NCBI GenBank assembly: GCA_051294905.1
Contig: CM119380.1
Span: forward strand, 3,348,001-3,412,000
DNA from: Botryllus schlosseri
Taxonomy: Eukaryota
Direction: 5' to 3'
DNA length: 64,000 bases
In this document: piece after piece, positions 26,548 to 62,300 of the stretch
How the letters are laid out: each line of letters begins with the position of its first letter
How positions within the stretch are numbered: position 1 is the stretch's first letter
Notes under the pieces: generated by a model
The model's input: only the letters and a program-made list of their open reading frames with translations
Databases searched by the model: none
What the model was told of the DNA's origin: nothing
Position numbers and translations under genes: made by a program

Positions 26548-29045
26548 TAGGGTTGTTCAGAATTGACCGACTTTCAAAAAGTCCAGGTTTTCAGTCCGAT
26601 TCCCATGCCTTATACCTTAAAAACATATTCTGGCTACTTGTTTTTGTAACTCGTCCCCTCCATCCGCGAGCACATTGAGCTGGAAGAATAGCAGCTGAAA
26701 ATAGGGGATTCCCCTAAAATCTGAGTGTCACGATTTTACCTAGCCTAGTTAAAGTGACATATAACATGGATTTATGCAGCTGTTGCGGTTTGGAGTGCTA
26801 CAAAACCCCACTATATAAGGCATTCCTAGTTCAGGATATCATTTCCATGTCCCACACTGCCTTAGAACCGCTCAAAACTACCTAAAACTGATAGTCATTT
26901 TGTTGGATCACATATCCTACACCCCTCAAACCTACCCGGCACTGTTCATCAATTTCCTGGATCCCCATGTGCAAGAATACAACTGTAAATGTAACATCCA
27001 CTCACAGCCACATAATAAACATCACAGGAAACGAAAAAATAAGGCAAAGAAAGATATCAACTTTTCAAAATATTACATAAATCAGGTGGATGAAATGGTT
27101 GATTTCGAGAAATCTGCATATCTGTTCCGGTGATCTTCCACAGCTTGTAGGAGGCTCGCTCGATGTTTTTTGTCATCCGGCCGTTATAAACGCAGCATAG
27201 TCGGTATTCAATTTTACCATACGCTCTGCTGCATCATTAACTACTTCAACAGTATTCACAAATTCTTGAGCAGTCACGAAATCCGGATCAGTTTGCCATT
27301 CCGAAACTGGAAGACTCAACCAATCATGTTCCACATGTATAGCATCAAATAGAAACCACGATTCTGACCCAATCAAAATTACCATACTCATTGACTCAGA
27401 GACAGAGTCAGAGATCAGACTGAGAGGCATACCTCTGCGAAAGTTTTCAGAGATTGGCATTTTCAGCAATTTAGTAGCCATCGCTTCCTTCAGTTTGTCA
27501 GGAATCTTTGGATTAGCCGAGACCATGGTAAATACCACCATTTCCTCAGTTAGATGCCAATGATGTTTTCGCAATTTCTTGTATGCCACATCAGCAACAG
27601 TGAGATCGCATAATGAAATGTTTTTCATGTCATGAAGGAATTTGAGATCATTCCAAGGTGCGTCACATGCAATACCAGTTTTCAACCAAGCTGGAACATA
27701 AAACAAAGCAATGAATGTATTGAATCGTTCCAACTTCTCAATGAACTCTTCAGAATAGGCCATTTGCTCACTCAACATGAACATTTTTTGACAGTACAGG
27801 ACTTGACTCATCCATCTAGCGCTATGAGTAGCACCAGGCTTGCGAAAACGATGATCAACATATTTGTCATCCAAAATCGCCAAGGTGCCTGTTGCACATT
27901 CTCTGTAGTCATCTCTTATCAAGACTTCTTTCTGCTTTCCATCATTGGGTTTTATCAGTGGAATTATTTCTTGCTTTGCTTCATCAGCTTTCATCGCCAA
28001 CCAGCTGCCTTCAATAAACTTCAGCGTTTTATAGCTTCTTGATATATCAATATGTTTCCACTTCTTCATATCAATATGTTTCCACTTCTTCTTGAAGGTA
28101 TTAAAATCCGTGTTTTCAGGGCCTGTGGTTGTCGATCCAAACAAACACTTCCAAACCTCTCGAATGACCAGTTCATAAATATGATGGCGACAGCCATTGT
28201 AGAAAACTTTCCTGTTAATCAATTCTTCAAGTAACGGAACCGCACCTTTGTTTTTACCAGTGTTTGAGGATGTTGTGTCAAACACAAGAGCTCTAACAGA
28301 TTTTGTTAAATTCCAAAGTTCCAGCAGTTCAAATGATGCATCAGCCTGTGCTTTTCCTGTGGCACTTTAATGATGCAGCAGAGCGTATGGTAAAATTGAA
28401 TACCGACTATGCTGCGTTCAACGGATGACAAAAAACAGCGAGCGAGCCTCCTACAAGCTGTGGAAGATCACCGGAACAGATTTCTCGAAATCAACCATTT
28501 CATCCACCTGATTTATGTAATATTTTGAAAAGTTGATATCTTTCTTTGCCTTATTTTTTCGTTTCCTGTGATGTTTATTATGTGGCTGTGAGTGGATGTT
28601 ACATTTACAGTTGTATTCTTGCACATGGGGATCCAGGAAATTGATGAACAGTGCCGGGTAGGTTTGAGGGGTGTAGGATATGTGATCCAACAAAATGACT
28701 ATCAGTTTTAGGTAGTTTTGAGCAGTTCTAAGGCAGTGTGGGACATGGAAATGATATCCTGAACTAGGAACGCCTTATATAGTGGGGTTTTGTAGCACTC
28801 CAAACCGCAACAGCTGCATAAATCCATGTTATATGTCACTTTAACTAGGCTAGGTAAAATCGTGACACTCAGATTTTAGGGGAATCCCCTATTTTCAGCT
28901 GCTATTCTTCCAGCTCAATGTGCTCGCGGATGGAGGGGACGAGTTACAAAAACAAGTAGCCAGAATATGTTTTTAAGGTATAAGGCATGGGAATCGGACT
29001 GAAAACCTGGACTTTTTGAAAGTCGGTCAATTCTGAACAACCCTA
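26548..29045 (-). mobile_element. hATm-type element with ~690-bp inverted arms
   Basis: Termini TAGGGTTGTTCAG / CTGAACAACCCTA; perfect TSD GTGCACGC; arms 26548-27240 and 28367-29045 nearly identical. Confidence 0.95.
27173..28366 (-). CDS. hATm transposase, C-terminal ~400 codons open, 5' end missing
   Basis: VFDTTSSNTGKNKGA, GCRHHIYEL, PGATHSARWM, APWNDL, VVNDAAERMVKL; 24-bp duplication KKWKHID. Confidence 0.88.
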   Translation of the reverse strand, partial: SATGKAQADASFELLELWNLTKSVRALVFDTTSSNTGKNKGAVPLLEELINRKVFYNGCRHHIYELVIREVWKCLFGSTTTGPENTDFNTFKKKWKHIDMKKWKHIDISRSYKTLKFIEGSWLAMKADEAKQEIIPLIKPNDGKQKEVLIRDDYRECATGTLAILDDKYVDHRFRKPGATHSARWMSQVLYCQKMFMLSEQMAYSEEFIEKLERFNTFIALFYVPAWLKTGIACDAPWNDLKFLHDMKNISLCDLTVADVAYKKLRKHHWHLTEEMVVFTMVSANPKIPDKLKEAMATKLLKMPISENFRRGMPLSLISDSVSESMSMVILIGSESWFLFDAIHVEHDWLSLPVSEWQTDPDFVTAQEFVNTVEVVNDAAERMVKLNTDYAAFITAG

Positions 29046-29742
29046 GTGCACGCGTTCGGCACTTTACGAATATCAGCGGACTGACCGCGAGGACGAGTTA
29101 GATCATTGTGCGCATTTGGCACGTAACGAATATCGGCGGATTGACCGCGAGAACGAGAAGGTATATCATTGTGCGCATTTGGCACGTGACGAATATCGGC
29201 GGGTTGACCGCGAGAACGAGAAGGTATATCATTGTGCGCATTTGGCACGTAACGAATATCGGCGGATTGACCGCGAGAACGAGAAGGTATGTGCGCATTT
29301 GGCACGTGACGAATATCGGCGGGTTGACCGCGAGAACGAGAAGGTATATCATTGTGCGCATTTGGCACGTAACGAATATCGGCGGATTGACCGCGAGAAC
29401 GAGAAGGTATATCATTGTGCGCACTTGGCACGTTACGGATATCGGCAGATTGACCGCGAGAACGAGAAGTTAGATCATTGTGCGCATTTGGCGCGTTACG
29501 GATATCGGCGGATTGGCCGCGAGAACGAGAAGTTGTATCATTAGATCTAAGGCCACTCTGGCACTGCGGAGTGCTTTGAGAACACGAGGGAATGACCGGC
29601 CTCGAACCGGCAGTGAGACTATGGGAATGGATGACGACGAAGTTCCAGCTCGGCTTTGCGGCCTGCAGCTGACCTCGTTAAGAATGAGGCAGAATAACTA
29701 CTCGACGATTCCTTTGAAGTTGTTGGCTTAATGCAGTCATAT

Positions 29743-29841
29743 CAGGGTTGGGTTAGGGGGAATATTAGGGTTGGGTTAGGGGATATTAGTGTTAGGTTAG
29801 GGGCAATATTTGGGTTGGCGGAGGGGGATATTAGGGTTAGG
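29743..29841 (+). repeat. G-rich telomere-like ~21-bp repeats (TTAGGGTTGGGTTAGGGGGATA)
   Basis: Multiple TTAGGG/TTGGG tracts read directly. Confidence 0.85.
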
Positions 29842-30060
29842 GTGTACTTTGCGGCCAAGATACTCGTGTAGGTACCCTCGCATAATTGGGCATGATACCA
29901 AGTGTACTTTGCGGCCAAGATACTCATGTAGGTACTCTCGCACAATAGGGCATGATACCAAGTGTACTTTGCGGCCAAGATACTCGTGTAGGTACCCTCA
30001 CATAATTGGGCATCACGTTTGGTGTATCACGTTTATTTGTGAAAGAACGAAACAAGGAAA
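29840..30060 (-). repeat. Left inverted arm of Merlin element: ~3 copies of 60-bp unit plus unique inner arm
   Basis: Reverse complement of the 31300-32600 arm, including TTTCCTTGTTTCGTTCTTTCACAAATAAACG. Confidence 0.92.
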
Positions 30061-30095
30061 ATTGAACGAAATTGCAGGAATGGTTAATCGTCATT

Positions 30096-31254
30096 TTAAA
30101 ATTGATACTCTGGATGAGTCGCAATCGCACGAATGATATCGGGGAAGTAATGTGCCCTGTCTCTAGTCATTCGCCACATCCACTCCTCAATATATGAGGG
30201 CACAAAACTTCTTACCGAACCATTCATGCGATTGAATTTTCTTTTGCAATCCCGCCATTGACTTTCAATATTATTCGTATGCACGCCATCGGGTGCCACG
30301 TATAAATCCTTATGACACACCGATTTGTGTGTGTAATTCAGGCCCATTCCTGTTAACGAAATACAAATACTTTCATAAAAGTGACTGTTATCGTTGAAAT
30401 ATACATTTTTACCGTTTATGCCACGATATGCAGCCCATTGATCGGACCAAATTTCAGTCCCTGGAGCCATGTGTTGACGAATAATCGGCAAAAGTGTAGC
30501 GGCGTCGCGACGATCGACGAATCGCATGAAGCATTGACTGCATAAAACATTTAATATTCTTCAAGTTTTGCTAACTTGGGTGTTATTTTCTGTATACAAA
30601 CTTCGTTGTGAGATCCACGCCTCCAAATATCCACTGTTGTGGGACGGGTCTTGCCTGGGCATTTTCCCCACGGCCGTGCTTTGCTATGACAGACTCGTCA
30701 ATAGCCACAACGTGTCCTGGACTACCAACGACGCCGGAGCCTCTCAGTACCTCACTCGAGCAGACCTTGAATATATCAGAGTAATCATAGTGCAATGCTA
30801 TACAATTAAACTTGGAAATTACCTCCCTGAAAAATTGACACCAGTCAATGCAGGTCCGATTACTGATCTTTAATTCGTGTATGATCGCGACCTGCAAATG
30901 GTCCTGTGACCAAAAGTAGAGGAGGTACAGTAGTTGCAATGGCGTCAGATTGCTTTTGTAAAAAAAAGAACCAAGACGTATGCTCCAAAAATTCTTGCAT
31001 TTCTGTGAATGAAAAATGTCACGAAACATTAGTTTCTGGCTCCAAAAAAAAATATGACCTCCTACCGGACAACGCCAGGCGGTCCGATCTTTAACGTTCC
31101 TGAATTTTTCAGCGCATGGCACGCTGCATCGTGGGCAATTCTGTTGCCTTGCAAGTAGTCCATGCTGCCTGAAAAACTGAATGGCTGCAGTGTTGCTTGA
31201 CAGCGCGCCCATTCCAATGAGCTCTGGTATGCCTACACCAACTAAACTCGACAT
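30096..31254 (-). CDS. Merlin (IS1595/ISXO2-like) DDE transposase, apparently intact, 5 exons (31254-31066, 31002-30823, 30765-30602, 30537-30413, 30349-30096), 303 aa
   Basis: Spliced length 912 nt with no stops; four 57-64 bp GT-AG introns; WRCPKC..SIR.GSFF, DWCQFFREVC, catalytic VAIDES / IWSDQW / NNIES. Confidence 0.93.
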
Positions 31255-31299
31255 GCTTAGGCTATTGATAAATGTGGGCTATGAAATGAAATGATATAT

Positions 31300-32600
31300 T
31301 ATTTTCCTTGTTTCGTTCTTTCACAAATAAACGCGATACACCCAACGTGATGCCCAATTATGCGAGGCTACCTACACGAGTATCTTGGCCGCCAAGTACA
31401 CTTGGTATCATGCCCAATTATGCGAGACTACCTACACGAGTATCTTGGTCGCAAAGTACACTTGGTATCATGCCCTGCCCAATTATGCGAGAGTACCTGC
31501 ACGAGTATCTTGGCCGCCAAGTACACTTGGTATCATGCCCAATTATGCGAGAGTACCTACACGAGTATCTTGGCCGCGAAGTACACTTGGTATCATGCCC
31601 AATTATGCGAGACTACCTACACGAGTATCTTGGCCGCAAAGTACACTTGGTATCATGCCCAATTATGCGAGACTACCTACACGAGTATCCTGGCCGCAAA
31701 GTACACTTGGTATCATGCCCAATTATGCGAGACTACCTACACGAGTATCTTGGCCGCAAAGTGCACTTGGTATCATGCCCAATTATGCGAGGGTACCTAC
31801 ACGAGTATCTTGGCCGCAAAGTACACTTGGTATCATGCCCAATTATGCGAGGGTACCTACACGAGTATCTTGGCCGCAAAGTACACTTGGTATCATGCCC
31901 AATTATGCGAGACTACCTACACGAGTATCTTGGCCGCAAAGTACACTTGGTATCATGCCCAATTATGCGAGACTACCTACACGAGTATCTTGGCCGCAAA
32001 GTACACTTGGTATCATGCCCAATTATGCGAGACTACCTACACGAGTATCTTGGCCGCAAAGTACACTTGGTATCATGCCAAATTATGCGAGACTACCTAC
32101 ACGAGTATCTTGGCCGCAAAGTACACTTGGTATCATGCCCAATTATGCGAGACTACCTACACGAGTATCTTGGCCGCAAAGTACACTTGGTATCATGCCC
32201 AATTATGCGAGAGTACCTACACGAGTATCTTGGCCGCAAAGTACACTTGGTATCATGCCCAATTATGCGAGAGTACCTACACGAGTATCTTGGCCGCAAA
32301 GTACACTTGGTATCATGCCCAATTATGCGAGGGTACCTACACGAGTATCTTGGCCGCAAAGTACACTTGGTATCATGCCCAATTATGCGAGGGTACCTAC
32401 ACGAGTATCTTGGCCGCAAAGTACACTTGGTATCATGCCCAATTATGCGAGGGTACCTACACGAGTATCTTGGCCGCAAAGTACACTTGGTATCATATCC
32501 TGTTATGCGAGTGTCTCTGTATGAGTATCTTGGCCGCAAAGTACACTTGGTATCATATTCTATTATGCGAGTGTCTTCACATGAGTATCTTGACCGCCTA
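31300..32600 (+). repeat. Right inverted arm of Merlin element expanded into a ~21-copy 60-bp satellite
   Basis: Unit ACGAGTATCTTGGCCGCAAAGTACACTTGGTATCATGCCCAATTATGCGAG(ACT/AGT/GGT)ACCTAC, in register across consecutive 60-nt lines. Confidence 0.97.
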
Positions 32601-33010
32601 GCTGGAGTGCCCGATGTCCAGTTCTTTTCAGGGTCTAGGGGAAGAGGAGCCCAGATAAACGTGCGACGAGAATCGAATCGGATCCGCCAAATTAGTGGGC
32701 GCTTATCGTTACCACTACGTTATCTCCCCCGCACCTATTATCACACCTTATTATGTGAGTGTCTGTACAGTACATGAGTGTAATGGGCGCAAAGTGCGTT
32801 GTATTTTTTAAATTTTCGATAAAAATGCGATACACAATACATAATGTGGTGAAGAGATCGTGTGGTGAAGAGATCGAAGTAAGTCGCTTCCTTGCCCTTT
32901 TCCTTCGTTTTCTTGTACAATTTCTTCATCTGGCATGCGAGCGAGCGATGTAAAATGTAATCTTGCTCATTACCGGCATGTGTATCTGTGAATTCAAGAT
33001 GAGTTGTTTA

Positions 33011-35198
33011 CATAGGCGCTGAACTCTGATTTTCCCTAGGTATGCGAGATCGATGACGTCACAAAGGGATGACGTCATAGTGCGCCAGAATTGGCAAATT
33101 AGCCGACTCGCAAGCGTTCAATATCACCTGGCACTTGTATATGGTGACAAAATTACGATATGATTAGGCAGGCCGCGTAGCCAGCCGGCCGCTTGCTGAA
33201 TTGATTGAATCCATTTCAAATTTACCAAGGTGGCATCAGTTTATTATGGTCAAGAACATGCACCAATGCCGATGATAATTCATCGATCGGATCAGCATCC
33301 TTGTGTAATATTTTTGGTTTGTAATATTTTATTTCTGCAATTTTCCACGGAAATGAAAATGCAACATGAAATAAATACACTCGCGACTTCGGTCACCTTG
33401 CTAACATGCATAACATATAAGCAGAACAATACCCGCCATTTACGGTGACGGGGAAACGAAAAAAATTTTTAACGATAAATAAATGCGAAAAAATCACAAA
33501 ATGAAAATGCGATAATAATCTAAGGGCCAGAGAAGACATGGCCAGTTCGCCCAGGGACAGGGGACACCAACACAGACAAAGGCCTCCACCAAAAACACAC
33601 GATATATGAGGTGGAGGCCGACATACAACACAAAAATACAGAGGCGAACTGGCGAGGTCCGACTACAGGCAGTATCATAATAGTTGTGGTGGTGGAAATC
33701 CAAAAAATAAAATTATCGTCATGAGGTTGGGGAACTCCTCCCCTTAGCATTTAGTACCACTCTGAAACTAAAATCGAAAACTAAAACTATCAACACAACT
33801 ATCGACACATCACGCTACCATAAGATTACCAACGCGTGCGACTGTGTAGTCAATTAGCGAGCTCGCAATCTCCGCAACATATTCGCCAACACACGCGCCG
33901 ACAATCGGGAGATTTCAATCACTCCGCCTCGAGAACAAATGAATACGCATCTTCGGCGACGGCTAATAAGGTTGCAGGTATTATTTCACCAAATAGAAAG
34001 TCTGTTCTGGACTCTATTCATTAGTGACTTTGATTTCATAGGAGTTAGAAGTTTCAATATCATGAGCCTGCAAGACATTTTCTGACCGTTCTGTTTTAGT
34101 ATTAGCGTTAGTCAAAATCAATTACGCCGCTGTCTGTTCACGGTCAGTATGTATTTCAATCAATTCCGTCCATGTTCATTGTTCAATGTCTGAGCCAGTC
34201 TGACATCACAATCACAGAAGAAGCGATAGTTCCGGCCGGCGCATAAGATATCATGTTCCTTCACAGCAGGAGATGACAATCGCAACATTTCGCGCATATA
34301 GAATTTAACATCTTTAGTATCAAGTTCTCGGTCTTGTTGCCTCGCGTTGCGTCTTCTGACCACTCGCGTTTGATCAAATGTTCAGGCGCATAGCCGAGTT
34401 GTTATGGAGTGTGTTCTATAATGGAATCCGCATCGATTTCAGGTGGTTCAAACCTTTCTCAACTTTTATAACTCAAGCCTTGACTCACATCTTCTGATGG
34501 TTATTGGTTATGTTCAAGTATTAGCGGAAATCAAGTACGCATGTACGCACAAGTCACACATTTTTGCGGACATTCGATGTCAGTAAGTTTCGTGATATCA
34601 ATCTTTAATCACACCCGATAGATAGGAGCCAACGCATGCTAGGCCGGAGACGCGATAGTTAGGCCGGCAATGATATATTTCGAACCACGCAGACGCAATT
34701 ATGTAGGCCAACGATGTTATCGTGCGCAGGCCAGTGATGGTATAGTGCGCACCGAGCCTATTGCCGATGCCATTCATCAAGCCAGCGCAACTAGACCTGA
34801 CGGAGACGGGATAAATCAGGCCTGCGACGATTGCGCGCGGTAATCAATGACCTAATTCCGCAATCATCTCAGCGTCGAGATCGCGTTGCGTTACATTGTG
34901 CACAAACGATTCTCGCAAATTGGAAACGCGCTTCCGGCTAATTGGCCGTGGCCCCGCGCAACACTGATAAATACGGACAACTTAATTGTAACTGAAGGAC
35001 GGAGTTTCGTTAAGCGCCTGAACGTATTGCTGTCGGATTACTTACGTGTTCAGCAGCACTACGAAACGCTTATTTCTAAATCGATCAATTCACCACCCAG
35101 TCAGTAACGGACTAAACCGAATTCTGGGTATGCCGCATACCCAAAAAAATTCCTAGGTATGCGCGGCATACCTAGCATACCTGAGTTCAGCGCCTATG
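33011..35198. mobile_element. hAT-type non-autonomous element
   Basis: TIR CATAGGCGCTGAACTC / GAGTTCAGCGCCTATG; perfect TSD GTTGTTTA. Confidence 0.93.
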
Positions 35199-35479
35199 GT
35201 TGTTTATAAGAGGCAATAATATGATATAATATGGAACCCCGACTTGATTTATAGGGCTTTGTGATTATATTGAAAGATGTCGCGGGCCGCGGGTTGAGAA
35301 CCCCTGATTTATAGGGTTTTGTGGGGAGCATAGTCGGTAATTACGTGAAGCACTATGAATTCCGGCACGTTGATGTGCAACACTGATAGGTGATGGTCAT
35401 GGGGATCACTTTCTCGAGGTGGCCGGATTCTACACTTGACCCTATCGATGTCAGTCAGTTCTCGTATTTTTTTAACGTA

Positions 35480-59589: not shown

Positions 59590-60190
59590 CGGGTGGCCGT
59601 GGTGCCAACGCTCAAGCAAGACCGATTCCACAGCAATGGATTTTTGGAGGCGTGGACCTTACGATAAAGTTTGTATACATAAAATAGAAATCCAACGTCA
59701 GCAAAACTTGAAGTATATAATGTTTTATGCAGCCAATGCTTTATGCGATTCGTCGATCGCCGGGACGCAAGTACCTTGCTGCCACTCATTCGACGATATA
59801 TTGCTCCGGGCACCGAAATTTGGTCGGATGAATGGGAAGCGTATCGGGGCAAAACCGGTAAATGAAGTCTTATAAAGCGATAATGGTGAATAAAGCGATA
59901 ATGGTGAATGTTATCAAAACATTTACGTTTGCTTATCAGGAATGGGCAACGGCTACACGCATAAAACAGTCTGCCACAAACGCCTGTTTAAGACTCCTCA
60001 AGGTGTTCACACCAACAATATTGAGAGTCCTTGGCAAGACTGCAAACGGAAGTTTAAGCGAATGAATGGTACGATACGGGGTTTTGTACCGTCATATATC
60101 GATGAATAGATGTGGCGTCGGACCAGAGAAAAAAACATTACTTCTCGGACATTGTTAATGAATTTGCCAGACAATACCTAGTGGAAAATG
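59590..60190 (+). pseudogene. Decayed paralogue of the Merlin transposase (3' three exons)
   Basis: GRGANAQARPIPQQWIFGGVDLT|QCFMRFVDRRDASTLLP..WSDEW|HTNNIES; same intron positions as 30096-31254; TAG in place of W in DE*MW. Confidence 0.92.
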
Positions 60191-61964: not shown

Positions 61965-62300
61965 TTGTGGCTGAAAAGTACGATTGATATCATGCCCGAC
62001 TATGCGAGTGTCTGCACATACGTATTGTGGCTGGAAACTACACTTGGTATCATACTCGACGATGCGAGAGTATTTATATCAGTATCTTGGCCGCAAAGTA
62101 CATTATACACCATACCCGACTATGCGAGTGTCTGCACATAAGTATTGTGGCTGGAAAGCACACTAGGTATTATACTCGACGATGCGAGAGTATCTACATT
62201 AGTATCTTGGCCGCAAAGTACATTAGATACCATACCCGACTATGCAGGTGTCTTCACATAAGTACTGTGGCTGGAAAGTACACTTGGTATCATACATGGC
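61965..62300 (+). repeat. Diverged Merlin 60-bp repeats arranged as a 120-bp dimer
   Basis: Alternating units CCGACTATGCGAGTGTCTGCACATA..GTGGCTGGAAA and CTCGACGATGCGAGAG..TCTTGGCCGCAAAGTAC. Confidence 0.88.

What the first reader, a model, noticed from the sequence alone, without database searches (positions are those of the whole stretch)
29740..32810. Merlin transposon whose inverted arms are generating a satellite (3 vs ~21 copies of a 60-bp unit)
Seen: the 60-bp array is not free-standing. It is the subterminal part of inverted arms flanking the Merlin gene, with ~3 reverse-oriented copies on the left and ~21 on the right, both joined to the same unique inner arm. The variant triplet (ACT/AGT/GGT) occurs in contiguous blocks, the pattern expected from recent local expansion. 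Established: TIR-internal repeats seeding satellites is known from foldback elements such as Tetris and Galileo. Inference: the unit is probably the transposase-binding repeat, and this is a snapshot of satellite birth next to an apparently intact transposase.
Basis: partly seen in the sequence, partly recalled or inferred. Interest (0 to 1): 0.85.

Follow-up and report, generated by a model that had tools for sequence, protein, structure and literature searches.

The report
Broken Merlin transposon with repeat-filled arms
This is a damaged, one-ended copy of a Merlin jumping gene; in this family the long inverted arms normally hold 1-74 tandem 60-bp units, so "3 versus 21" reflects a truncated arm rather than a satellite being born, although the surviving array has recently been rebuilt in place.

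Summary
There are 2.9 inverted 60-bp units at 29842-30013 and 20.7 at 31350-32597, around a Merlin/IS1595 gene, with a shared 49-bp inner arm and variant blocks.

Complete relatives elsewhere in the genome have this layout: GGGTCAAGTGTAGAAT terminus, a ~590-bp outer arm, a 60-bp array, a core, then the mirror image. All 10 have perfect 8-bp target duplications. Arrays run from 1 to 74 units per arm and are unequal in every element.

The window copy is damaged in three ways:
- Its left arm is cut inside a unit at 29842 and joined to an unrelated 22-mer array. It has no outer arm and no terminus.
- Its right arm runs on to 35442 and carries a nested 2188-bp transposon.
- The 382-bp region upstream of the gene is replaced by an inverted copy of the 3' inner arm.

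The 303-aa, four-intron ORF is still open.

Genome-wide there are only 579 unit cores, and 96% lie in the Merlin-type loci I fetched. No free satellite exists in this assembly.

Local turnover is real. 21 of 23 units in this copy carry a private base, against 1 of 591 elsewhere. The ACT and GGT variants occur only here.

Each unit contains a copy of the terminal motif, which is moderate support for transposase binding.

The scan had already noted the gene (s1-243973) and a second copy in the window (s1-244018).

The parts
29739..29841 (+). 22-23-bp telomere-like tandem repeat (about 4.7 units) abutting the truncated left arm. It is not part of the 60-bp family. The same repeat forms the arms of foldback MITEs that carry this Merlin family's termini.
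   Evidence: The junction sequence occurs once in the genome. A short-read unitig bridges 29780-29874.
29842..30013 (-). Left arm (3' side of the gene): 2.9 units of the 60-bp repeat. The outermost unit is cut inside the conserved core (...AAAGTACAC|). No outer arm or terminus follows.
30014..30062 (.). 49-bp inner arm on the 3' side of the gene. It is present at this position in the other full-length copies.
30096..31254 (-). Merlin/IS1595-type DDE transposase gene. Five exons: 31254-31066, 31002-30823, 30765-30602, 30537-30413, 30349-30096. Four GT..AG introns of 63, 57, 64 and 63 bp. Open 303-aa frame.
31301..31349 (.). Inverted copy of the 3' inner arm (96% identical). It starts about 50 bp upstream of the ATG and replaces the 382-bp upstream region found in the other copies.
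   Evidence: A loose end at 31304 in reads shows the canonical upstream sequence of other copies.
31350..32597 (+). Right arm (5' side of the gene): 20.7 units of the 60-bp repeat. 19 of the 20 units scanned carry the private C28 base, with ACT and GGT sub-blocks. The outermost units are degenerate.
32598..33010 (+). Proximal part of the unique outer arm, about 90% identical to the arms of other copies.
33011..35198 (.). Nested non-autonomous DNA transposon of 2188 bp. Perfect 16-bp TIRs CATAGGCGCTGAACTC. 8-bp duplication GTTGTTTA at 33003-33010 and 35199-35206. High-copy family.
   Evidence: An empty-site joint 33002>35199 appears in reads.
35199..35442 (+). Distal part of the outer arm, ending in the true right terminus ...ATTCTACACTTGACCC. 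The flank TATCGATG is the unpaired half of the target duplication.

Best explanation
Shown. The window holds a degenerate, one-ended copy of a Merlin-superfamily DNA transposon family with foldback-like architecture. Each complete element has a GG-initiated terminus (GGGTCAAGTGTAGAAT...), a unique outer arm of about 590 bp, a tandem array of 60-bp units and a central core. The core is a four-intron gene for a 303-aa DDE transposase, or nothing in the non-autonomous forms. The other half mirrors the first, and the whole element is flanked by an 8-bp target duplication. Array length is hypervariable. Two insertions that are 100% identical over 3.2 kb of unique sequence differ by 70 versus 31 units on one arm and 35 versus 40 on the other.

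In the window copy the left arm was broken inside a unit and joined to a 22-mer array, which removed its outer arm and terminus. The right arm took a nested transposon. The upstream region was replaced by an inverted copy of the opposite inner arm. Nearly all units of the surviving array descend from one private unit variant.

Inferred. The array was rebuilt in place by unequal exchange, replication slippage or arm-templated repair. The last of these would also explain the duplicated inner arm and why the private GGT variant occurs on both arms. The conserved core of each unit (AAAGTACACTTGGTAT) is a copy of the terminal motif in the same orientation. It most likely acts as an accessory transposase-binding site, as shown for Galileo and proposed for Tetris. 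With only one end, this copy can no longer be excised by cut-and-paste.
For: Family architecture and target duplications: (10 of 10 complete elements have perfect 8-bp duplications; arms are inverted over 1.4-2.7 kb at 92-99%).

Merlin identity. The family definition is taken from PMC8101967.

Truncated left arm: searches find no outer arm left of 29842 anywhere in the window. One search finds no terminus with the matching duplication in the genome. One search shows the left flank is unrelated DNA. One search shows the break lies inside a unit.

Nested element and true terminus.

Upstream replacement.

No free satellite: 579 cores, 270+/309-, control 0; 555 of them in the fetched Merlin-type loci.

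Array instability.

Private variants: ACT 9 and GGT 7, none elsewhere; C28 in 21 of 23 units here versus 1 of 591 elsewhere; this is the most homogeneous array of 10 or more units.

Terminal motif in the unit: 14 of 22 positions match, same orientation, 307 of 20000 shuffles reach this; major-allele frequency 0.978 in the core versus 0.866 elsewhere, over 619 units.
Against: Array lengths come from one assembly. The public runs are short-read unitigs and cannot size any array, so some length differences could be assembly error.

The terminal-motif match is only moderately significant (p about 0.015).

MITEs of the same family moved with only 73-121 bp of the terminus plus 22-mer arrays that lack the motif. 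The 60-bp units are therefore dispensable for transposition.

The syn:nonsyn ratio between the window copy and its relatives is roughly neutral (5:21), so nothing shows that this gene copy is functional.

The mechanism of the left-arm junction is unresolved.
Confidence: 0.8

Rival explanations
1. An intact Merlin element keeps the ancestral roughly 3 units on the left, while its right arm is expanding into a new satellite next to a working transposase.
For: The right array is unusually homogeneous and built from private variants in blocks. Arrays in this family change length quickly.
Against: The left array ends inside a unit at a junction with foreign DNA, and has no outer arm or terminus. 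21 units is ordinary for the family, which ranges from 1 to 74. No array exists outside the elements. The copy also lacks its upstream region and carries a nested insertion.
Confidence: 0.07
2. Assembly artefact. The array length, or the junction between the 22-mer and the unit, results from mis-assembly of repeats.
For: Tandem and inverted repeats are prone to assembly error. Unitigs give zero or patchy cover inside the array.
Against: Unitigs bridge the 22-mer/unit junction (29780-29874, no mismatches, three gap positions) and the inner-arm/array junction (31304-31404, exact match) in runs of the same species. The nested element has a clean 8-bp duplication, and the family architecture recurs at more than 15 loci with target duplications.
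Confidence: 0.08
3. A functional chimeric element. The 22-mer array is an alternative, MITE-type left arm, so the copy is still two-ended.
For: The 22-mer array lies in the orientation it has in the left arm of the family's foldback MITEs.
Against: MITE arms begin with about 158 bp of terminus and leader before the 22-mers. Here unrelated DNA directly precedes the 22-mers, and no GGGTCAAG terminus lies anywhere to the left.
Confidence: 0.03

Closest known systems
Merlin superfamily of DNA transposons (Feschotte 2004, as summarised in PMC8101967), including Merlin families with internal tandem repeats
   Same: DDE_Tnp_IS1595 transposase, 5'-GG termini and 8-bp target duplications. PMC8101967 already reports internal tandem repeats in several Merlin families. 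Its S1 Table lists Merlin-1_DR with 1000-bp TIRs and a 44-bp repeat. It proposes that Merlin could spread proto-satellites.
   Different: The inverted arms here are 1.4-2.7 kb, against the 24-462 bp given for the superfamily. They are made mostly of symmetric arrays of up to 74 units. Array-only foldback derivatives and 22-mer MITEs share the termini.
Tetris / DAIBAM of Drosophila virilis (PMC4079207)
   Same: Modular foldback arms consisting of a terminal domain, a variable tandem-repeat domain and an inner domain. The repeat unit shares a stretch with the terminal domain. A MITE shares the termini. Rearranged forms are common.
   Different: Tetris has no known autonomous partner, and its TIR-220 unit also forms kb-size free satellite arrays in beta-heterochromatin. 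Here the autonomous Merlin gene is present and no free arrays were found.
Galileo (P superfamily) and other foldback elements
   Same: Long TIRs with internal tandem repeats of variable number. [quoted passage not shown] 2013, as cited in PMC4079207).
   Different: The transposase superfamily differs (THAP-P versus IS1595/Merlin), and so do the target-duplication length and the termini. Binding has not been tested here.

Membership tests
Merlin superfamily | Transposase with a DDE_Tnp_IS1595 domain and an intact DDE triad | tested here: met
   PF12762, E 9.5e-14. The N-terminal piece matches PF12762-bearing proteins. AIDES, SDQW and NNIES align with the homologues' catalytic blocks.
Merlin superfamily | 8- or 9-bp target-site duplication | tested here: met
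   Perfect 8-bp duplications in 10 of 10 complete family members and in 3 MITEs. The window copy has only one end (flank TATCGATG), so it cannot be tested itself.
Merlin superfamily | TIRs beginning with 5'-GG | tested here: met
   The terminus GGGTCAAGTGTAGAAT is found at every end, including window 35442.
Merlin superfamily | TIR length in the described range of 24-462 bp (a description, not a strict criterion) | tested here: not met
   The inverted arms are 1422-2672 bp at 92-99% identity.
Foldback-like transposons (FB, Galileo, Tetris) | Very long inverted arms that contain tandem repeats of variable copy number and make up most of the element | tested here: met
   L012, L013, L027 and L028 are almost entirely arms. 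Arms hold 1-74 units and are always unequal.
Satellite DNA derived from a transposon (Tetris TIR-220 model) | kb-size arrays of the unit standing free of the element | tested here: not met
   There are 579 exact cores genome-wide in near-equal orientations, and 555 of them lie in the fetched Merlin-type loci. The nearest thing to a free array is a 23-unit fragment that still carries arm remnants (L011). Unassembled sequence was not tested.
Arrays of accessory transposase-binding sites (Galileo type) | The unit contains the sequence that the transposase binds at the terminus | tested here: inconclusive
   The unit shares TACACTTG plus GGCCG, at the same spacing and orientation, with the terminus (14 of 22 positions, p about 0.015). 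This is the best-conserved block of the unit. However, MITEs that lack the units still transposed. No binding data exist.

The most novel reading that the evidence does not exclude
The 60-bp units are arrays of pseudo-termini bound by the Merlin transposase, and binding makes them breakage hot-spots. Two independent one-ended copies, the window at 29842 and C3:35342738, are broken within the same roughly 8 bp of the conserved core and joined to 22-mer arrays of the sister MITE family. This would point to aberrant, transposase-initiated events that shuffle arm modules between family members and seed new tandem-repeat families, one of them telomere-like. On this reading the family would be a natural system in which an identified autonomous transposase drives foldback and MITE diversification and very rapid array turnover.
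Probability: 0.15. Interest if true: 0.6.

Novelty: new variant of a known kind. Interest (0 to 1): 0.35.

Why it matters
The window copy by itself is an ordinary transposon wreck. The family it belongs to is more useful. It links an identified autonomous Merlin transposase to foldback-type non-autonomous elements and to MITEs that share its termini, whereas Tetris and DAIBAM have no known autonomous partner. It also shows array lengths changing by tens of units between copies that have no substitutions in 3.2 kb. That makes it a tractable system for two questions: whether repeats inside TIRs act as accessory transposase-binding sites, and how quickly transposon-borne arrays turn over before any satellite forms. 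The genome shows no step from element-bound array to free satellite, which corrects the "satellite birth" reading.

Tried and rejected
- I searched for the missing left end in three ways: a BLAST of the outer arm against the whole window, a genome search with the outer arm, and a pattern search for TSD plus terminus. None found it.
- I tested whether solo arms elsewhere (L008, L009) are the lost left arm. Their flanks (CAACCTTC, TATTTCCT) do not match TATCGATG.
- I tested whether the left flank 28900-29745 belongs to any family member. It gave no hits.
- A stretch of the outer arm looked tRNA-like. ARAGORN found no tRNA and Rfam gave no match at E 0.1 or better.
- I laid public reads to size the array. 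All the runs are short-read unitigs, so they confirm junctions but not array length.
- A one-intron gene model gave false frameshifts in the other copies. The four-intron model resolves them, because the indels all fall in introns.
- A literature search for a Merlin foldback element found nothing relevant in the searchable library.
- I did not run a structure prediction, a complex prediction or a large protein search beyond, because none would change the verdict.
Full report
**1. Observation**

Tandem Repeats Finder reports a 60-bp period with 2.9 copies at 29842-30013 and 20.7 copies at 31350-32597. The two blocks are inverted relative to each other at 94-97%. One pair, 29888-30062 with 31301-31475, runs through a 49-bp unique inner arm.

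Between the blocks, on the minus strand, lie two long ORFs. The second carries DDE_Tnp_IS1595 (PF12762, E 9.5e-14). The first matches PF12762-bearing proteins. The ACT/AGT/GGT variants sit in blocks.

However, 29739-29841 is a different repeat of 22-23 bp, and the element extends well beyond 32810.

**2. What the family looks like**

The window is G000:C10:3348001-3412000, in a 495-Mb genome; marine metagenome runs hold small shares of the stretch.

The internal region has three other full-length copies, on C8 (96%), C14 (95%) and C6 (95%). There are also partial and more distant copies.

I mapped the unit, the inner arm, the internal region and the flanks on 29 fetched loci. The sequence to the right of the window's array (32598 onward) recurs in inverted orientation on both sides of the other copies. 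Self-alignment shows inverted arms of 1422-2672 bp at 92-99%. The ends all read GGGTCAAGTGTAGAAT.

Every complete element has a perfect 8-bp target duplication, 10 of 10: CACTGATT, GGAAATTG, AATCATTG, CACATTCC, GATCTTAT, GAATTTTC, CTCCTGTG, AGAAATTC, CAAATTCG and GAGAATTC. GG termini, 8-bp duplications and the IS1595-type DDE domain are the defining features of Merlin (PMC8101967).

The architecture is: terminus, outer arm of about 590 bp, 60-bp array, core, then the mirror image.
- Some members have the transposase (C8, C14, C6).
- Some have a divergent Merlin gene (L016, L029).
- Several are almost nothing but arms (L012, L013, L027, L028), which makes them foldback-like non-autonomous elements.

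Units per arm, left/right:

| Element | Left / right |
|---|---|
| L001 | 26/13 |
| C14 | 68/31 |
| C6 | 38/31 |
| L007 | 1/13 |
| L010 | 11/17 |
| L012 | 31/19 |
| L013 | 23/14 |
| L014 | 32/40 |
| L015 | 28/18 |
| L016 | 32/14 |
| L027 | 10/11 |
| L028 | 5/4 |
| L029 | 15/11 |

Asymmetry is the rule, and 21 units is mid-range.

**3. What happened to the window copy**

*(a) Right arm.* Homology to other arms stops at 33010 and resumes at 35199, then runs to the terminus at 35442. In between is a 2188-bp element with perfect 16-bp TIRs and an 8-bp duplication GTTGTTTA. It belongs to a family with more than 2000 first-look candidates. Reads also show the uninterrupted arm form, a joint from 33002 to 35199 with 8 shared bases.

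*(b) Left arm.* The array ends at 29842 inside the conserved core of a unit (...AAAGTACAC|) and abuts the 22-mer array. Several searches failed to find the rest of the arm:
- No outer arm lies anywhere to the left in the window.
- The left flank matches no family member.
- No terminus preceded by TATCGATG exists in the genome.
- The junction sequence is unique in the genome, and a unitig bridges it.

The copy therefore has one end only.

*(c) Upstream region.* In L001, L003, L004, L006 and L007 a conserved region of 373-382 bp precedes the gene. In the window it is gone. From about 50 bp upstream of the ATG the sequence switches to an inverted copy of the 3' inner arm and then the array. The "same inner arm on both sides" is thus a rearrangement specific to this copy, not a family feature.

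*(d) The gene.* Alignment to homologues shows three in-frame insertions plus one frame-shifting segment. All four are GT..AG introns of 63, 57, 64 and 63 bp. With them removed, the window, C8, C14 and C6 copies each encode an open 303-aa protein. All indels between copies fall in introns. This agrees with the earlier scan note s1-243973. Between the window and C8, 5 codons differ synonymously and 21 non-synonymously, which is roughly neutral.

**4. Is a satellite forming?**

The conserved 16-mer core of the unit occurs 579 times in the genome (270 forward, 309 reverse, reversed control 0). Of these, 555 (96%) lie in the loci I fetched, all of which carry Merlin termini or arm sequence. The window-type unit, matched as a 34-mer with up to 3 mismatches, occurs 119 times at about 9 loci. 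The family totals roughly 35-40 kb and has no free arrays in this assembly. Neither is the claim that a satellite is being generated.

**5. Turnover is real and fast**

In the window copy, 21 of 23 units have C at unit position 28, against 1 of 591 units elsewhere. ACT (9 units) and GGT (7 units) occur nowhere else. The right array is the most homogeneous array of 10 or more units. Almost the whole array therefore descends from one private unit lineage, amplified in blocks.

GGT occurs on both arms, so there was exchange between the arms, or one arm was copied from the other. Arm-templated repair would also explain the duplicated inner arm. This last step is inference.

Independent evidence comes from the C14 and C6 elements. 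They are separate insertions with different duplications. They are 100% identical over 1673 bp of core, a 1106-bp spacer and 460 bp of outer arm. Yet their arrays hold about 70 versus 31 units on one arm and 35 versus 40 on the other. One caveat applies: all lengths rest on a single assembly, and the public runs are short-read unitigs that cannot size arrays.

**6. Is the unit a transposase-binding site?**

The right terminus reads GGCCGTATTCTACACTTGACCC. The unit reads GGCCGCAAAGTACACTTGGTAT in the same orientation. That is 14 of 22 matching positions, including an exact 8-mer, and 307 of 20000 shuffles reach this value. Across 619 units from 21 loci this block is the best conserved, with a major-allele frequency of 0.978 against 0.866 for the rest of the unit. 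It is invariant between the two unit sub-families, which otherwise differ by about 25%.

This parallels two known cases. The Tetris unit shares 37 bp with its terminal domain, and the Galileo repeats carry extra THAP-binding sites (PMC4079207).

Against a required role: about 1.2-1.4-kb foldback MITEs carry the same termini (73-121 bp) and 8-bp duplications but have 22-mer telomere-like arrays in their arms, and they have clearly transposed. The units are therefore at most accessory sites.

**7. Unexplained**

The window junction and a second unique junction at C3:35342738 both join a 22-mer array to a unit broken within the same (AA)GTACAC. The two are mutually complementary, like the two sides of one insertion. 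But they lie on different chromosomes and have different Merlin flanks. The cause could be a breakage hot-spot at a bound pseudo-terminus, or chance.

**8. Comparison and verdict**

The family is a member of the Merlin superfamily by three tested criteria. Its architecture resembles foldback elements such as Galileo and Tetris. Internal tandem repeats in Merlin, and the idea that Merlin may spread proto-satellites, are already published (PMC8101967). I found no paper linking Merlin to foldback elements.

The window copy itself is a wreck with an open ORF. The family is a new architectural variant of a known kind, and of moderate interest.

Noticed in passing
G000:C14:5127645-5138001 (L002/L003) and G000:C6:16543664-16551976 (L004/L005): Two insertions of the same autonomous Merlin with different 8-bp duplications. 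They are 100% identical over 3.2 kb of unique sequence, yet their 60-bp arrays differ by up to 39 units. This suggests very recent activity and extreme array instability, or assembly error.
   Followed up: partly
window 33011-35198: Nested 2188-bp non-autonomous DNA transposon with TIR CATAGGCGCTGAACTC and TSD GTTGTTTA. Its family is very abundant (more than 2000 first-look candidates, 91-98% identity). The window copy carries about 490 bp more than most copies.
   Followed up: partly
L019 (C3:20012637-20014057), L021, L023, L025: Foldback MITEs of about 1.2-1.4 kb. They have this Merlin family's termini and 8-bp duplications, but their arms are inverted arrays of a telomere-like 22-mer (ATATTAGGGTTGGGTTAGGGGA). 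The 22-mer gave 767 first-look candidates genome-wide.
   Followed up: partly
window 29841/29842 and L009 4738 (C3:35342738): Two unique junctions between a 22-mer array and a 60-bp unit. Both break the unit within the same conserved (AA)GTACAC and complement each other, and both lie in one-ended Merlin copies. No explanation yet.
   Followed up: partly
window 29051-29542: A 63-bp tandem repeat of 8 copies (89% matches) just left of the Merlin remnant. It is unrelated to any fetched Merlin locus.
   Followed up: no
window 59595-60152 and 61968-62293: A second Merlin remnant, 71% identical, with related units organised as a 120-bp dimer. No exact family terminus was found next to it.
   Followed up: no
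window 26900-28693: A 370-aa ORF (27173-28285, minus strand) with no Pfam hit. It is flanked by near-identical 77-80-aa ORFs in inverted orientation (26900-27133 and 28451-28693). An earlier scan note calls it a hAT-type element.
   Followed up: no
L007 (C14:8329842-8335738): A deletion derivative that keeps only the 5' end of the transposase gene and its upstream region. Its outer arms are 100% identical over 698 bp, its duplication is perfect (CACATTCC), and it holds 1 versus 13 units. An intact two-ended element can therefore be even more lopsided than the window copy.
   Followed up: partly
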